A stretch of DNA of 64,000 nucleotides, taken from positions 62,001 to 126,000 of the IMG/VR virus record IMGVR_UViG_3300046694_000296. One strand, 5' to 3'. The notes under the pieces were generated by a model, which ran no database searches, was not told where the DNA came from, and saw only the letters and a program-made list of their open reading frames with translations. Of the stretch, positions 3,172 through 47,662 are shown one piece after another. The first letter of the stretch is position 1, and each line of letters opens with the position of its first letter. The position numbers were made by a program, and so were the translations under genes.

Positions 3172-3295
3172 TCGCGCCAGCAGTCTGATTTGAGAATGTA
3201 GGTCGGGCGCAATGCCCGACCCAATCGAGAGGTTCCATCGACGTCGCGCACCGGAAGGTGGCGAGCTCAATGCAGTCTTTCAACCAGGAGCACAC

Positions 3296-3982
3296 ATGCA
3301 AGACAACGCCATCAAACTGTTGGACCACGGCCACATTCGCCTCGTCGAGTCGATGGGCTCGGACCTGTCGATCGTCCGCAACGCCCGCGTGAGCTACGAC
3401 GCCGAATGGCGCACGGGCGAGGACGCCGGCAAAGATGCCAAGCTGATCGACTACCTCGTCAAGAACCGCCACACCAGCCCTTTCGAGGCCGTGACCTTCA
3501 CCTTCGACGTGAAGGCGCCTATTTTTGTGTTCCGCCAGTGGCACCGGCATCGCACGGCGGCCTACAACGAAATCTCTGGGCGATACGCCGAGCTGCCGGA
3601 GGAGTTCTACGTCCCGATCCTCGCTGACATTACGGAGCAGTCGTCGTCCAACAAGCAGATGCGCACGGACACGCAGCACCCGATGGCGCAAGAGTTCGCC
3701 GACATTATTCGCTCAACCTGCGAGCAAGCCTTCAGGCAATACCACTACCTGATCGAGAACGGCTGTCCGCGCGAACTCGCGCGCTCGGTGCTCCCGCTCG
3801 GCACCTACAGCCATATGTTCTGCACCGTCTCGCTGCACAACCTTATGCACTTCCTGGGCTTGCGTCTGCACTCGCACGCGCAGAAGGAGATCCGCGTCTA
3901 CGCCGAAGCGATGCTGGAGCTGATCGAGCCGGTCGTGCCGGTGGCGGTCGCCGCATACCGTAAGCATCGCATCGCCCATTAA
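3296..3982 (+). CDS. thyX: FAD-dependent thymidylate synthase
   Basis: HTSPFE, RQWHRHRTAAYNEISGRY ThyX motif, ELARSVLP; AGGAG RBS before ATG 3296. Confidence 0.96.
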   Translation: MQDNAIKLLDHGHIRLVESMGSDLSIVRNARVSYDAEWRTGEDAGKDAKLIDYLVKNRHTSPFEAVTFTFDVKAPIFVFRQWHRHRTAAYNEISGRYAELPEEFYVPILADITEQSSSNKQMRTDTQHPMAQEFADIIRSTCEQAFRQYHYLIENGCPRELARSVLPLGTYSHMFCTVSLHNLMHFLGLRLHSHAQKEIRVYAEAMLELIEPVVPVAVAAYRKHRIAH

Positions 3983-4062
3983 ACGCATCGGTATTGCCTC
4001 ACTATACTGATAAGTAACCCGTTACACACGGTGCAAACCAAACAACCACAGGAGTAAAACAC

Positions 4063-4734
4063 ATGACGCAAGCCGCAAACACGCTGGACAACGCCACCTA
4101 CCGCACCGAAGTCCTCTCGACCGAATCGAAGCCCGAGTCGATCAACTTCGGCCCGGCCACGCTGCTGATGGCGCTGAGCCTCGCGGTGCAAGCCGGCAAC
4201 CTGCTCGATCAGGTGAAGCGCGCGGTGTTCTACGGCAAGCAGCTGGACCCGAAGGTGACGGGCGAGGCGCTGCAGGCGATCCCGGCGATGGTCAAGGACA
4301 TCAGCTTCCCGCTCGCCACCGGCCGCTACCTCGATCCGCGCGACGTTGACTTTTTCCCGGGCATTGAAGGCGAAGCCCGCAAGGCACTGTCGCTGCAAGG
4401 CGTGGACGTGCGCCTGCTGCACGCAGCGGTCGGCCAGTTCACCGAGTCGTCCGAGTTCATCGAGGCGCTGATCCCGACGTTCTTCGGCACGCCGGTCGAC
4501 AAGGTGAACCTGCTGGAAGAGCAGGGCGATAGTTCATGGTATGGCGAGATCGCGCTCGACGCGCTCGGCTACAGCCGCGAGCAGTGCAATTTCACCAACA
4601 TCAAGAAGCTGAAGGACAAGAAGGCGGGCCGCTACCAGAAGGGCGCATTCGATCCGAACGCTGCGATCAACCGTGACACGACCGCCGAGCGTGCGCTGCT
4701 CGAAGCAGGCGCTGATGCACCGGCGGCCGCCTGA
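4063..4734 (+). CDS. MazG-like nucleotide pyrophosphohydrolase
   Basis: LLHAAVG..TESSE, NLLEEQGD..WY, NIKKL, RY..G.F..AAINRD pattern. Confidence 0.75.
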   Translation: MTQAANTLDNATYRTEVLSTESKPESINFGPATLLMALSLAVQAGNLLDQVKRAVFYGKQLDPKVTGEALQAIPAMVKDISFPLATGRYLDPRDVDFFPGIEGEARKALSLQGVDVRLLHAAVGQFTESSEFIEALIPTFFGTPVDKVNLLEEQGDSSWYGEIALDALGYSREQCNFTNIKKLKDKKAGRYQKGAFDPNAAINRDTTAERALLEAGADAPAAA

Positions 4735-5360
4735 TGATCGGCCTCGCGGGCAGCCAAAGGGTTGGCAAGAGCACGCTCGCGAAGGCGTATGCGGAGGAGT
4801 CCGGGGTGAAGTTCGTCGCCACCGGCGCCTCCGCAACGTTTCAGCGTCTCGGCCTGGACCCGAAAAGGGACTACGACTTCGCTACGCGCCTGCGCATTCA
4901 GCGCGAGATCCTCGCCGACTGTGACCGGTTGTATGAGAAGAGCGGCACGCGGTTCATCACCGACCGCACGCCGATCGACTTTCTCGGTTACACGCTCGCC
5001 GATGTCACGCGCGAGAACGTGCGCGGGAAGCTCGACGCGGAGCTGCGCCGCTACATCGTGGATTGCTATGCGTGCGCCAACAAGCACTTCACGGTGCTGG
5101 TGCTGGTGCAGCCGGGCATCGCGCTGATCGAAGAAGAAGGGAAGGCTCCGGCCAACCCGAGCTACATGGAGCATCTGAACGCGCTGATGCTGGGGCTGAT
5201 GGCCGACGACACGCTGCACTGCGACCACTACAAGATTCCGCGCCGGGCGATCGAGCTTGAGGTGCGGATCACTGCGGTCGAGGAAGCGGTGCGCAAGTCC
5301 GCGCAGCGCCACATCGCGAAGATGGAAAAGTTGCACGAAGACGGGCTGGTGCTGCACTAG
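4734..5360 (+). CDS. P-loop nucleotide kinase-like protein
   Basis: N-terminal Walker A GSQRVGKST, DRTPIDF motif; coupled to the MazG-like gene. Confidence 0.7.
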   Translation: MIGLAGSQRVGKSTLAKAYAEESGVKFVATGASATFQRLGLDPKRDYDFATRLRIQREILADCDRLYEKSGTRFITDRTPIDFLGYTLADVTRENVRGKLDAELRRYIVDCYACANKHFTVLVLVQPGIALIEEEGKAPANPSYMEHLNALMLGLMADDTLHCDHYKIPRRAIELEVRITAVEEAVRKSAQRHIAKMEKLHEDGLVLH

Positions 5361-5364
5361 CCGA

Positions 5365-5403
5365 GAAAGGGAACCGACAATATCAATCAGTCGGTTCCCT
5401 TTC
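5365..5403. terminator. Probable bidirectional intrinsic terminator
   Basis: 14-bp perfect stem GAAAGGGAACCGAC / GTCGGTTCCCTTTC with 11-nt loop. Confidence 0.7.
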
Positions 5404-5429
5404 AAATCAACCAATTACACGAGGACAAC

Positions 5430-6047
5430 ATGACGCAGAACGTCAAGCTCACGAACCATATCCGCGACCAGATCATCGACAACGCCTTGAAGGGCGCATT
5501 CGAGAAGGAACAGAAGGCGAACAAGGCTCGCCTCACGAAGTTCGCCGACAAGTGCTACCGCATGGTGGTGAGCGCGGCGCAAGAGAAGGCTGCGCGCCAG
5601 GCGCCGGACGAGTTCCTGAACCTCTGCAACATCGCGCGCCTCAATCTGAAAGACGATCAGGGTTACAACAAATTCACGGCCTGGAGCGTGGATCTGTCGC
5701 GCGTGGTTCCGTTCCCGAGCGGCAGCACGACGCTCACGATTAAGAGCAATGCGATCGCCGAAGAATATCGCGCCATCGACGCAGAGAGCGACGCGCTGAC
5801 CGAAAAGCGCAAGCAACTCAAGGAAAGCCTCAAGCGCACGGTCTACAGCACGTCCTCGCTGAAGAAGCTGATCGAGATGTGGCCCGAGGTGGAAGGATTC
5901 CTGCCGGAATCCCTCTCCGCGCCGAAGCCGATGCTGCCCGCGCTGCCGGTGGGTGATCTGAATGCCGCGCTGAAAGCCGCCGGCGTCAAGGTGGGTGTGA
6001 TCGTCGCGCCGAAAGCAACGGGCGGCCTCGTGGCCGTAGCAGCATGA
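5430..6047 (+). CDS. Nmad5-like (nucleotide modification associated domain 5) protein
   Basis: KLTNHIRDQIIDNA start and KLIEMWPEVEGFLP end match my recollection of the family; not searched. Confidence 0.6.
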   Translation: MTQNVKLTNHIRDQIIDNALKGAFEKEQKANKARLTKFADKCYRMVVSAAQEKAARQAPDEFLNLCNIARLNLKDDQGYNKFTAWSVDLSRVVPFPSGSTTLTIKSNAIAEEYRAIDAESDALTEKRKQLKESLKRTVYSTSSLKKLIEMWPEVEGFLPESLSAPKPMLPALPVGDLNAALKAAGVKVGVIVAPKATGGLVAVAA

Positions 6048-7900: not shown

Positions 7901-8061
7901 CACGGACATCTTTCACGGACATCTGGGCCATCGACGTCGATCAGCGCCTCATCGATATTTTCATGCTCCACGCGGGAATGGTCGATCCGATCTGAATATC
8001 GAACGGGCCAAGATTCGCCCACTATACTAAGTAACAAGTAAGTTACTAATTTGAGGTGAAA

Positions 8062-8637
8062 ATGACGATTATCGTAGGGGGCGACATCGAGACAACGGGC
8101 CTCGATCAGTCCGCGGGCCACCGCATCATCGAAATCGCGCTGACGCTCCACGAGTTCGAAACCGAGAAGTTCCTGGGCAAATACGTCCAGCGCTGCAACC
8201 CCCAACGCCCCATCGATCCTGACGCGCAGCGCGTGCACGGGATCACCTTCGAGCAGCTGGCGCACGAGCCGACGTGGGAACAGGTCGCGCCGAACGTGCA
8301 CCGCGTGCTGTCGGCCGCGAAATACTTCGCCGGGCACAACGTGATCGGCTTCGACTGGCCGTTCATCACGGGCGAGTTCAAGCGCATCGGCATGGCCGCA
8401 CCGGGGCTGGAGTTGATCGACACGATGGTTGGCGCCCGCTGGGCGACGCCGCTCGGCAAGCTTCCGAATTTGGGCGAGCTTTGCTTCGCAACGGGGATTC
8501 CGTATGACCCGAGCCAAGCGCACGGTGCCTTATACGACATCGACGTCAACATGCAGGCTTACTTCGCCGCGCGCCGCATGGGCTTCTTCGGCCCGCAGAT
8601 CATTCAACCCGTTCCCCCAATCCTGGAGGCAGCATGA
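8062..8637 (+). CDS. DEDDh 3'-5' exonuclease (DnaQ/epsilon-like)
   Basis: DIETTG, GHNVIGFD, IDT, HGALYD motifs. Confidence 0.92.
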   Translation: MTIIVGGDIETTGLDQSAGHRIIEIALTLHEFETEKFLGKYVQRCNPQRPIDPDAQRVHGITFEQLAHEPTWEQVAPNVHRVLSAAKYFAGHNVIGFDWPFITGEFKRIGMAAPGLELIDTMVGARWATPLGKLPNLGELCFATGIPYDPSQAHGALYDIDVNMQAYFAARRMGFFGPQIIQPVPPILEAA

Positions 8638-8951
8638 GCGAGCGCACACCGGGTCCACTGGTGCTCGGCAAGATGGGCGTAATCAAGGGAGGGCCAATTC
8701 ACCACTTCACGAACGGCAGTGACCAGTCGCAGCTTTTCATGGCGATGGCCGGCATCGACATGCCGCACACCGAGCGCGACGCGAACGCCGTCCACATGGT
8801 CATGTGCTGGAACACGCACGACGAACTGGTTGCGGCGCTGCATGAGCTCCGCGAGCTCGTGGCGAACGATTGCGAAGTGAGCGACGCGAGCCGGGCCGCC
8901 TACCGGGCCGCGCTCGATCGTGCAGACATTGTTCTCGCCGAGGTGCCCTAA
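8634..8951 (+). CDS. Hypothetical protein
   Basis: 105 aa, ATGA overlap. Confidence 0.7.
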   Translation: MSERTPGPLVLGKMGVIKGGPIHHFTNGSDQSQLFMAMAGIDMPHTERDANAVHMVMCWNTHDELVAALHELRELVANDCEVSDASRAAYRAALDRADIVLAEVP

Positions 8952-9620
8952 TGCTGGTCAGCGTGTTCGCCGACGCCTCGTTCGACCCCTGAGACACGCG
9001 CGGGCGGCTTTGGCTGCTGGTCAAAGTCCCTGCGGGGCCGGCACTCGGGTGGTGCGCCTTTTAAGAGCCTTGCGCGTAACAACGTAGTCGCGGAGATGAT
9101 GGCGTGCCTAAACGGCGTTCACCTTGCCTTCGTGCACTTGATTGCATGTCCGGGAGACACGATTCTCATTCAAACGGATTGCACGCCTGCTATTGCAGCG
9201 TTCGAAGGGAGGCGTATCCTCCAAGAAGACGAGCAAGTTATCGTCGACGGCCTGCGGACGTTGCTGCAAATCAAGAGCGCTACGGTGCGATGGAAGCACG
9301 TTAAAGCGCAGACGAACGGGGATCAGCCGCGTCTGTGGGTCAATAACCATTGCGACCACCTAGCGAAGAAGGGGATGCGCGAGGCACGGGCTCAAGCGCG
9401 CGCGAAGGCAGACGAGCGTTCGAAAAAGCGAGAATCCCGGAGAGCGGATAGGATGCTCGACCAAAACAACAGGCGCACGTTCGCGTTTGGTTTCAGTGAA
9501 GAGGAGTGGAACAACTATGTTATGGACCCCAGCCTTTCATCAATACCGCCTTGGGAAGAACAAGAGCCGGCTCAACAGCCTGTGGCTGGGCACCATCTGG
9601 GCGTTTCTCACGCTGCCTGA
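8951..9620 (+). CDS. RNase H-like protein interrupted by a +1 frameshift at CCC-TGA (programmed shift, pseudogene or sequence error)
   Basis: Frame 0 MLVSVFADASFDP stops at TGA 8990; +1 frame continues ETRAGGFGCW...AEMMA...IQTDC...KHVKAQ...NNHCDHLAK, giving a complete D-E-D-D set. Confidence 0.75.
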
Positions 9621-9913
9621 GATCCTGCTGTTCAATCTCTTGGTGCCCGCGTTTTCGAACCCGAAGGTGGCGCATTTACGGCTGCTCTCGACCGTGGTGC
9701 TCCTCATCAAGTTACCTCTATTCGGGCTGCTTGGTCAGGTGAGCTCGGAGGACGTGACGATTGAGGAATTAGCGAAACGTCTGAGGTCGGTCCAATAAGC
9801 AGTCTGTAGTCTGTAATTGCAATTGAGTGCACAGGGTTAAGCGCTAAGGCGCTTTTGTTTTAGCCTCGTGCCTAAGTAATAGCTTACTCATACACTAATA
9901 GGTGGAGAGGCTC

Positions 9914-46753: not shown

Positions 46754-47662
46754 ATGCCATTGCTGCGAGAAGAAGCCGACAAGCTGAGTAACAATCAGCT
46801 GGTCGCAGGCGTGATCGAGGAAATCATCGACAAGGATGAGCTCTTCGCGCTCCTGCCGTTCGTCGGCATCAACGGAAAGGCTTACGTCTACGATCGCGAG
46901 AACACCCTGCCGGACGCAGAGTTCTACGACGTGAACGACGAGCTGGATGAATCGGCTGGCACGTTCACCGAGGTCGTGGCGAAGCTGCGCATCCTCGCTG
47001 GTGACGTGGACGTCGACAAGTTCCTGCAGGAAACCGAGTCCGACACGAACGATCAGCGTGCTACGCAGATCGGTCTGAAGGCCAAGGCGGTTGCCCGCAA
47101 GTTCAAGCGCACGATCGCTCAAGGCGATTCGACGGCCAACGCGAAGGAATTCGACGGCCTGCCGAAGATGGTGTCGGCTGCCCAGACGCTCGACGCAGGC
47201 GGTGCGGCCAACGGCGCGGCGCTCACGCTGTCGATGCTCGACGAGCTCGGCGATGCGGTCATCAACGGCGCGGACGCATACGTGATGCGCCCGGGCACGA
47301 TCCGCGCATACCGCGCGCTGCTGTATGCAACCGGCGGCATCCAGCCGGCGATGGTCGAAGTGCCGAACTTCGGTCAGGCGATCCTCGGCCACAACGGCAT
47401 CCCCATCCTCCGTAACGACTTCCTGTCGAACACGGAGACGAAGGGCACCAACACGAACACGTGTTCGGTGTATGCGGTTCGCCTGAACGAACTGGACGGC
47501 TTCCACGGCCTCTGGGGCGGCAAGCAAGCCGGCATTCGCGTCGAGGACATCGGCACGGTGCAGAACAAGGATGCAGACCGCATCCGCGTGAAGTGGTATT
47601 GCGGCTCGGCGCTGAAGTCCACGCGCTCGCTGGCACGTCTGCGCGGCGTGACGAACGTCTAA
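46754..47662 (+). CDS. Major capsid protein
   Basis: Position, 302 aa, strong codon bias, GD.....KEFDGL and NGIPI..NDF patterns. Confidence 0.9.
   Translation: MPLLREEADKLSNNQLVAGVIEEIIDKDELFALLPFVGINGKAYVYDRENTLPDAEFYDVNDELDESAGTFTEVVAKLRILAGDVDVDKFLQETESDTNDQRATQIGLKAKAVARKFKRTIAQGDSTANAKEFDGLPKMVSAAQTLDAGGAANGAALTLSMLDELGDAVINGADAYVMRPGTIRAYRALLYATGGIQPAMVEVPNFGQAILGHNGIPILRNDFLSNTETKGTNTNTCSVYAVRLNELDGFHGLWGGKQAGIRVEDIGTVQNKDADRIRVKWYCGSALKSTRSLARLRGVTNV

What the first reader, a model, noticed from the sequence alone, without database searches (positions are those of the whole stretch)
8951..9620. RNase H-like gene split at CCC-TGA, a known +1 frameshift motif
Seen: ATG 8951 gives 13 codons ending GAC CCC TGA (8984-8992) and carries the first catalytic Asp (VFADAS). 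The +1 frame (CCT GAG ACA...) holds the remaining E, D, D and runs to 9620. The ORF-track start at 9096 lacks the first Asp and starts just after the Glu codon, so it cannot be the enzyme. Known: CCC followed by a stop promotes +1 slippage of tRNA-Pro in E. coli genes and Listeria phage structural genes. Inference: programmed low-level or release-factor-sensitive expression of a nuclease. A single extra C from mutation or sequencing error gives the same picture.
Basis: partly seen in the sequence, partly recalled or inferred. Interest (0 to 1): 0.6.

Follow-up and report, generated by a model that had tools for sequence, protein, structure and literature searches.

The report
Phage RNase H broken by extra C
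A soil phage's RNase H gene is split by one real extra C that only this clonal lineage carries, so it is an ordinary recent frameshift mutation that happens to form a slippery CCC-TGA site, not a conserved programmed frameshift.

Summary
ATG 8951 opens 13 codons ending GAC CCC TGA (8984-8992). The +1 frame (8988-9620) carries the rest of an RNase HI-type protein. Read through, the 222-aa product passes Pfam RNase_H and matches PHROG 531.

The extra C is not a sequencing error. Logan contigs of four runs, and JGI or Logan assemblies of at least seven further rhizosphere samples, carry the same CCCC with 0-1 mismatches.

It is private to this lineage:
- All 16 protein homologues are in frame at the site.
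- So are 14 IMG/VR loci found at DNA level, the nearest relative (94% aa) and the second copy in the same record.
- They show varied codons there: GAY CCT GAR in the closest kin, also CCA, CCG, CCC and CAC.

One C added to the ancestral GAC-CCT-GAG gives CCC-TGA automatically. I found no upstream SD-like stimulator, no unusual downstream fold and no phage tRNA. The allele also has Gln at the otherwise invariant His that aligns with E. coli RNase HI H124.

Verdict: a recent, real inactivating insertion. By analogy with E. coli, at most about 2% incidental +1 read-through is possible. Programmed recoding is not supported.

In passing: the 215.6-kb source record looks like two related ~108-kb genomes joined at a shared 127-mer.

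The parts
8951..8992 (+). Frame-0 head of the RNase H gene: ATG, 13 codons (MLVSVFADASFDP) and stop TGA. Contains catalytic Asp8 (8972-8974).
   Evidence: a GAGG Shine-Dalgarno-like motif lies at 8940-8943, seen directly in the sequence
8986..8989 (+). Run of four C where all relatives have one base fewer (GAY CCT / GAC CCT). This is the inserted base.
   Evidence: DNA alignment A2; identical CCCC in other assemblies
8987..8992 (+). CCC_TGA, a known +1 shift-prone 'shifty stop'. Here it is the automatic by-product of adding a C to ancestral CCT-GAG.
   Evidence: literature
8988..9620 (+). +1 frame body of the RNase H gene (210 codons plus stop). Holds Glu48 (9093-9095), Asp76 (9177-9179), Gln120 in place of the family's invariant His (CAG 9309-9311) and Asp135 (9354-9356).
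9096..9620 (+). 174-aa ORF from the first ATG of the +1 frame. It lacks Asp8 and Glu48, so it cannot be an active RNase H.
   Evidence: this exact protein is not in the 15-billion-protein collection; JGI gene calls on these contigs show no + strand gene here
9407..9408 (+). Junction of a private in-frame 45-nt (15-codon) deletion in the length-variable Lys/Pro-rich linker after the RNase H domain.
   Evidence: the undeleted form is seen in run X3 (table 5c)
8634..8951 (+). Upstream 105-aa gene with no family match. Its stop overlaps the RNase H ATG. It was used as a marker of this lineage's genetic background.
8056..8637 (+). DnaQ-like 3'-5' exonuclease (RNase_T family). It places the RNase H gene in a replication module.
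9517..9798 (+). Downstream 93-aa hydrophobic protein gene that overlaps the RNase H 3' end by 104 nt.

Best explanation
The gene is an RNase HI-type nuclease in the replication module of a roughly 108-kb tailed phage from rhizosphere soil. Its protein relatives are named in Paraburkholderia and Burkholderia, so that is the likely host group. In this one clonal lineage a single C was added to a C-run at codon 13: ancestral GAC-CCT-GAG became GAC-CCC-TGA-G. Most ribosomes therefore stop after a 13-residue peptide, and the gene is functionally knocked out or very strongly turned down. The CCC_TGA motif is not a selected signal. It is what this insertion produces automatically from the ancestral sequence. 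Because CCC_UGA is intrinsically +1 shift-prone, a small fraction of ribosomes may still slip and make the 222-aa protein, which additionally carries His120 to Gln at the position aligning with E. coli H124. Shown: the insertion is real, it is private, relatives are in frame, and no stimulators were found. Inferred: the loss of function, any residual read-through (on the order of 2% or less, by analogy with E. coli) and the host.
For: 1. The split is real and sits inside an RNase H domain.
2. It is not an error. Logan contigs of four runs span 8986-8990 with 0 gaps and 0 other letters (table 8: records 1, 9, 15, 22). Eight further contigs (L009-L014, L016, L017; six JGI assemblies of other samples plus two Logan contigs) read the same CCCC, with 0-1 mismatches over 240-670 nt.
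3. It is private. The nearest relative L004 reads GAT CCT GAG, L001 reads GAT CCT GAA, and copy B of the same record reads GAC CCT AAC.
4. Sixteen full-length homologues of 196-245 aa all begin MLV..DAS.D in one frame.
5. Fourteen IMG/VR loci found by tblastn, independently of gene calling, are all in frame and show varied codons at the site. 105 cultured-phage records match residues 1-148 or more as a single tblastn piece.
6. In-frame variants at least 90% alike co-occur in run X3, including one contig that reads GACCC+TGAGACG (tables 4 and 7).
7. No 5' SD-like element precedes the site. The 88 nt downstream fold no better than shuffles (z = -0.69). The whole record has no tRNA gene.
8. Gln120 is the only residue in the window protein that departs from a column invariant in all other homologues. 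That column aligns with the VKGH His (H124) of E. coli RNase HI.
9. CCC_UGA on its own generally gives no more than about 2% +1 frameshifting in E. coli (PMC3082878).
Against: 1. Substitutions polarised to the window's branch since its split from L004 are 12 synonymous and 7 non-synonymous, against 14 and 6 on the intact sister branch. No relaxed constraint is visible. That fits a very recent insertion, but it equally fits a gene still in use.
2. The 210-codon +1 frame has no further stop.
3. The lineage is abundant and widespread across many samples, so the allele is at least not harmful. A leaky site may be better tolerated than another frameshift.
4. Contigs are consensus sequences, so a minor in-frame allele on the same background could be hidden.
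5. No expression data exist: no RNA run holds the stretch.
Confidence: 0.85

Rival explanations
1. Programmed (selected) +1 ribosomal frameshifting at CCC_UGA sets a low, possibly RF2-sensitive, level of RNase H, as in the Listeria phage tsh genes or prfB.
For: The site is a textbook shifty stop with perfect +1 re-pairing (CCC to CCU). The downstream frame is intact, and the N/S ratio on this branch resembles that of the intact sister. The lineage is successful in many samples.
Against: There is no conservation at all. Every relative found by protein or DNA-level search is in frame, with varied codons. All carriers are one clonal background with 0-1 mismatches. No SD-like 5' element, no exceptional 3' structure and no dedicated tRNA were found. 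The motif follows automatically from one C added to CCT-GAG.
Confidence: 0.07
2. Sequencing or assembly artefact: the true genome has three C's and an intact gene.
For: Homopolymer length errors are a classic artefact. The source record is itself partly an assembly artefact: two genomes joined at a 127-mer.
Against: The same CCCC appears in Logan contigs of four runs, built with a different assembly pipeline. It also appears in six JGI assemblies of other samples and two Logan contigs. In run X3 both the CCCC contig (depth 9) and one-base-shorter variants were assembled side by side, so the assemblers do resolve the difference. A 4-base run is not error-prone on short-read platforms (general knowledge).
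Confidence: 0.02
3. The functional product is the N-terminally truncated 174-aa protein from ATG 9096. It would be a non-catalytic nucleic-acid-binding or regulatory derivative of RNase H.
For: The ORF 9096-9620 is open. A GGAG lies just upstream at 9092-9095.
Against: The ORF lacks Asp8 and Glu48 and the first beta-strands of the fold, so it is unlikely to fold as RNase H. The GGAG abuts the ATG with no usable spacing. No homologue of that architecture exists: the one 176-aa hit is a fragment on a 916-bp contig. The exact protein is absent from the collection, and gene callers do not call it.
Confidence: 0.05

Closest known systems
Phage RNase H of PHROG 531 / Pfam PF00075 (type 1 RNase HI, E. 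coli rnhA-like), as annotated in Pseudomonas phages NP1 and PaMx25, Xanthomonas phage DoCa3 and Seuratvirus/Nonagvirus-like coliphages
   Same: Same domain over its full length. Same Asp, Glu, Asp, Asp catalytic set at residues 8, 48, 76 and 135. Same position in a replication module beside a DnaQ-like exonuclease.
   Different: Interrupted by a +1 frameshift at codon 13. Gln replaces the conserved His of the VKGH motif. It carries a roughly 70-80-residue C-terminal extension (conserved ...IPPWEEQE... tail) shared only with its Burkholderia/Paraburkholderia-type relatives, and a private 15-codon deletion in the linker.
[quoted passage not shown]
   Same: Identical shift site and the same expected mechanism: peptidyl-tRNA-Pro re-pairs from CCC to CCU while UGA waits in the A site (PMC3082878, PMC5009743).
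   Different: Those sites are conserved among related phages or enterobacteria. In the phages they add a C-terminal extension to a structural protein, and pheL has a defined 5' nascent-peptide stimulator (penultimate Phe). Here the site is 13 codons into an enzyme gene, is unique to one clone, and has Asp as the penultimate residue and no detectable stimulator. The zero-frame product is a useless 13-mer.
'Savior'/compensated indels, where low-level frameshifting rescues a frameshift mutation (for example herpesvirus thymidine kinase G-run mutants; PMC5009743)
   Same: A homopolymer indel in a viral enzyme gene, at a sequence where ribosomes can occasionally restore the frame. The non-shifted product is useless.
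   Different: No evidence here that residual expression occurs or is needed, and no known selective agent.

Membership tests
RNase HI / Pfam PF00075 (PHROG 531) | Sequence match to the family model above the curated threshold over the whole domain | tested here: met
   The read-through protein P0001 scores 30.6 bits against a cut-off of 25.8, residues 3-142 on profile 4-140/141. PHROG 531 matches at 1.7e-21. A family profile matches E. coli-type RNase HI structures at 5e-7. A six-frame search of the uncorrected DNA with PF00075 does not report this copy.
RNase HI / Pfam PF00075 (PHROG 531) | Catalytic carboxylates Asp10, Glu48, Asp70, Asp134 (E. coli numbering) | tested here: met
   D8, E48, D76 and D135 are invariant in alignment A1 and present in the window. 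However, D8 lies in a different reading frame from the other three.
RNase HI / Pfam PF00075 (PHROG 531) | Conserved His of the VKGH motif (E. coli His124) | tested here: not met
   The window has Gln120 (CAG 9309-9311). All 16 homologues have His.
RNase HI / Pfam PF00075 (PHROG 531) | One uninterrupted reading frame encoding the domain | tested here: not met
   TGA at 8990-8992 after codon 13; the rest is in the +1 frame.
Programmed +1 ribosomal frameshift site | Shift-prone P-site codon with +1 re-pairing, followed by a slow-to-decode A-site codon | tested here: met
   CCC_UGA at 8987-8992; the +1 codon is CCU. Shiftiness is documented in PMC3082878.
Programmed +1 ribosomal frameshift site | Conservation of the shift site and two-frame architecture among orthologues | tested here: not met
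   No CCC_TGA and no frame change in L001, L003 or L004, in 16 database proteins, or in 14 IMG/VR loci found at DNA level. All carriers are one clone.
Programmed +1 ribosomal frameshift site | Stimulatory signal (5' SD-like element, nascent-peptide signal or 3' RNA structure) | tested here: inconclusive
   No SD-like sequence in the 15 nt before the site. The downstream 88 nt fold at z = -0.69 against shuffles. The penultimate residue is Asp, not the Phe of pheL. A nascent-peptide effect cannot be excluded by computation.
Programmed +1 ribosomal frameshift site | Trans-frame protein product detected | not testable with these tools
   No RNA run holds the stretch and no proteomic data are available.

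The most novel reading that the evidence does not exclude
A newly arisen, not yet conserved 'leaky knock-down'. The C insertion happened to create one of the most shift-prone sites known. The phage lineage would now make about 1-2% of the normal RNase H dose by +1 slippage, and that low, release-factor-sensitive dose would be tolerated or even favoured. This would catch the birth of a recoding site in a natural phage population.
Probability: 0.08. Interest if true: 0.45.

Novelty: new member of a known kind. Interest (0 to 1): 0.15.

Why it matters
The practical lessons outweigh the biology.

1. A CCC_TGA split in a gene is not evidence of programmed recoding until relatives are checked. Here the motif is the arithmetic consequence of one C added to CCT-GAG.
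2. Protein databases cannot reveal frameshifted relatives, because gene callers skip them: JGI called an antisense ORF over this gene. The conservation test therefore has to be done at DNA level, as was done here.
3. The gene should be annotated as a frameshifted RNase H (pseudogene, or 'ribosomal slippage not shown'). The 174-aa ORF should not be called an enzyme.

If residual slippage were shown to matter, this would be a rare natural example of an incipient recoding site. The evidence does not favour that.

Tried and rejected
- An exact-pattern scan built to catch both alleles found only one unrelated chance match in metagenome contigs (L006). In viral contigs it found only the already known L001 contig.
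- A profile-guided scan of genome contigs found no relative.
- The exact 174-aa ORF is not in the protein collection.
- I wrote a crude script to count other frame changes between the two genomes of the record, to judge whether genome A is generally degraded. Stop-to-stop ORFs in this GC-rich DNA produced dozens of false positives and the script missed the RNase H case itself, so it is uninformative.
- A phage-encoded frameshift-suppressor tRNA was considered. ARAGORN finds no tRNA in the whole record.
- Transcriptional slippage was considered and rejected, because a 4-base C run is far shorter than known slippage tracts (general knowledge).
- The 45-nt deletion was considered as a sign of gene decay. 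It lies in a linker whose length varies among intact homologues, so it carries little weight.

Full report
**1. Observation**

- ATG 8951 overlaps the stop of the upstream ORF (TAATG) and follows a GAGG motif.
- It opens 13 codons, MLVSVFADASFDP, that end in GAC CCC TGA (8984-8992).
- The +1 frame is open from 8952 to the stop at 9618-9620. Its first conventional start codon is ATG 9096, directly after the GAG codon for Glu48 (9093-9095).
- Reading CCCT as one proline gives a 222-residue protein (P0001).
- P0001 passes Pfam RNase_H (30.6 bits, cut-off 25.8, nearly the full model) and matches PHROG 531 'Rnase H' at 1.7e-21.
- A profile of the family aligns with E. coli-type RNase HI structures over the whole domain.
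- The catalytic carboxylates are Asp8 (frame 0) and Glu48, Asp76 and Asp135 (+1 frame). They are invariant in the family alignment.

**2. Context**

- The window is positions 62,001-126,000 of a 215,656-bp IMG/VR virus record.
- Neighbouring genes are ribonucleotide reductase subunits, ThyX, a MazG-like protein, an Nmad5-domain protein and a DnaQ-like exonuclease (8056-8637). Further on come terminase, portal, major capsid and tape-measure genes.
- This is a tailed phage, and the RNase H gene sits in its replication and nucleotide-metabolism module.
- Named protein relatives come from Paraburkholderia and Burkholderia assemblies. The runs that hold the sequence are rhizosphere metagenomes.

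**3. Is the extra C real?**

Yes.
- Logan contigs of four runs (one possible source sample and three others) span the site with no gap and no differing letter (table 8: records 1, 9, 15 and 22).
- An exact look-up of the upstream 105-aa protein found 17 contigs.
- Of the ten shown, one (L008) is the source record itself and one (L015) ends before the site.
- The other eight are six JGI assemblies of other samples and two Logan contigs. All read ...TTCGACCCCTGAGAC... with 0-1 mismatches to the window over 240-670 nt.
- In run X3 the assembler separated the CCCC contig (depth 9) from co-occurring variants one base shorter (table 4), so the length of the run is resolved.
- Sequencing or assembly error is therefore very unlikely.
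- All carriers share one nearly identical background. They form a single clonal lineage.

**4. Is the site conserved?**

No.
- Nearest relative L004 (protein P0003, 94% identical in aligned columns): TTC GAT CCT GAG.
- L001 (77% aa): TTC GAT CCT GAA.
- Second copy in the same record (69% aa): TTC GAC CCT AAC.
- Sixteen database homologues of 196-245 aa all start MLV..DAS.D and continue in one frame.
- 105 cultured-phage records match residues 1-148 or more as a single tblastn piece.

Gene callers skip the broken gene: JGI called an antisense 80-aa ORF over it. Protein databases are therefore blind to frameshifted relatives, so I repeated the test at DNA level.
- Fourteen IMG/VR loci found by pattern scan plus tblastn are all in frame.
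- Their codons at the site are CCT-GAA, CCA-GAG, CCG-GAG, CCC-GAG, CCA-CAC, CCT-GCG, CAC-GGC and others.
- None has CCC_TGA.

**5. Origin of the motif**

- The ancestral state in the closest kin is GAY-CCT-GAR.
- One in-frame variant in run X3 reads GACCC followed by TGAGACG (table 7).
- Adding one C to the run in GAC-CCT-GAG necessarily yields GAC-CCC-TGA-G. The T of the proline codon and the GA of the glutamate codon become the stop.
- The 'known frameshift motif' is therefore the automatic product of the commonest kind of mutation (homopolymer slippage) at this particular sequence. It needs no selection to explain it.

**6. Stimulators**

- No SD-like sequence lies upstream of the site.
- The 88 nt downstream fold no better than shuffled sequence (z = -0.69).
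- The record encodes no tRNA, which excludes a phage suppressor tRNA.
- The penultimate residue is Asp, not the Phe that stimulates pheL.
- According to PMC3082878, CCC_UGA alone generally gives no more than about 2% +1 frameshifting in E. coli. Higher levels require 5' signals.
- PMC5009743 confirms that the site is used in Listeria phage tsh genes, where it is shared by related phages.

**7. State of the gene**

Two further private changes exist.
- An in-frame 45-nt deletion at 9407/9408. It lies in a linker whose length varies among intact homologues, so it carries little weight.
- His120 to Gln (CAG 9309-9311). This is the only window residue that departs from a column invariant in all 16 homologues.
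- That column aligns with the His of the E. coli VKGH motif, His124. From general knowledge, that His contributes to catalysis and product release. This hints at loss of constraint, or at a weakened enzyme even if read through.

Against decay:
- Substitutions assigned by outgroups to the window's branch are 12 synonymous and 7 non-synonymous.
- The intact sister branch has 14 and 6.
- Most of the branch therefore evolved under purifying selection, and the +1 frame has no further stop.

Either the insertion is very recent, which the clonal carrier population supports, or the gene is still used. The data cannot separate these two. The first needs no extra assumption.

**8. Mechanism proposed**

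- Shown: a real, lineage-private +1C insertion splits a canonical phage RNase HI gene after codon 13.
- Inferred: translation from ATG 8951 terminates at UGA 8990, yielding a 13-mer.
- Inferred: the 174-aa ORF from 9096 lacks two catalytic residues and the first strands of the fold, so it is not an enzyme. Its GGAG abuts the ATG with no spacing.
- Inferred: at most a few percent of ribosomes may slip CCC to CCU and make the 222-aa Q120 protein.
- Inferred: the phage evidently tolerates this. Host RNase HI and Pol I may cover primer removal (general knowledge). No second PF00075 gene exists in this phage's own genome. The only other match in the record lies in the second genome.

**9. The source record**

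- The 215,656-bp record consists of two collinear genomes 70-88% identical at nucleotide level: A (108,902 bp) and B (106,627 bp).
- They are joined head to tail at an exact 127-mer that occurs at positions 1, 108,903 and 215,530. This 127-mer is also the 'direct terminal repeat'.
- In the window the junction is at 46,903-47,029, inside the major capsid gene.
- Related contigs are 105-109 kb.
- This looks like a figure-of-eight assembly path through a shared node of k-mer length, not a 215-kb genome.
- The intact 'second copy' of RNase H therefore most likely belongs to a different, co-occurring phage.

**10. Verdict**

This is an ordinary, real, recent frameshift mutation in a phage RNase H gene. 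The shift-prone motif is incidental. Programmed frameshifting is not supported (probability about 0.07) and sequencing error is practically excluded. Interest is low.

Noticed in passing
window 46903-47029 (= record positions 108,903-109,029); whole record G000: The 215,656-bp 'complete, DTR' virus record is two collinear genomes, A (108,902 bp) and B (106,627 bp), 70-88% identical at nucleotide level. They are joined at an exact 127-mer found at record positions 1, 108,903 and 215,530, inside the major capsid gene (46754-47662, PF20911). Most likely this is a figure-of-eight assembly through a shared node of k-mer length. Window positions 1-46,902 belong to genome A and the rest to genome B. 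Relatives are 105-109 kb.
   Followed up: yes
window 9517-9620: The 3' end of the RNase H frame and the start of the next gene (9517-9798, 93-aa hydrophobic protein) overlap by 104 nt in different frames. Both translations are conserved in relatives. Positions 9530-9619 are the best conserved stretch of the gene at nucleotide level (0.87-0.91 mean column identity in 8 relatives), which suggests dual coding.
   Followed up: partly
window 8634-8951 versus L001, L003 and L004 upstream of the RNase H ATG: The gene directly upstream of RNase H (105 aa, no family) is a different gene in the three nearest relatives, where it is a 161-192-aa protein ending ...GETC or ...REGCACS. Homology begins exactly at the RNase H start codon, so this is a mosaic recombination breakpoint.
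   Followed up: partly
window 3212-6047: A cluster of ThyX (PF02511), a MazG-like pyrophosphatase, a kinase-like P-loop protein and an Nmad5 'nucleotide modification associated' domain protein (PF18757), next to ribonucleotide reductase genes. This may be a DNA base-modification module.
   Followed up: no
window 9309-9311: CAG (Gln) where all 16 homologues have His (CAY). This is the position that aligns with His124 of E. coli RNase HI.
   Followed up: yes
window 9475-9717 (L008 3475-3717), minus strand: JGI gene calling places an 80-aa antisense ORF across the 3' end of the broken RNase H frame and the gene after it, and calls no + strand gene between 8952 and 9516. Frameshifted copies of this family are therefore invisible to protein-database searches.
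   Followed up: yes
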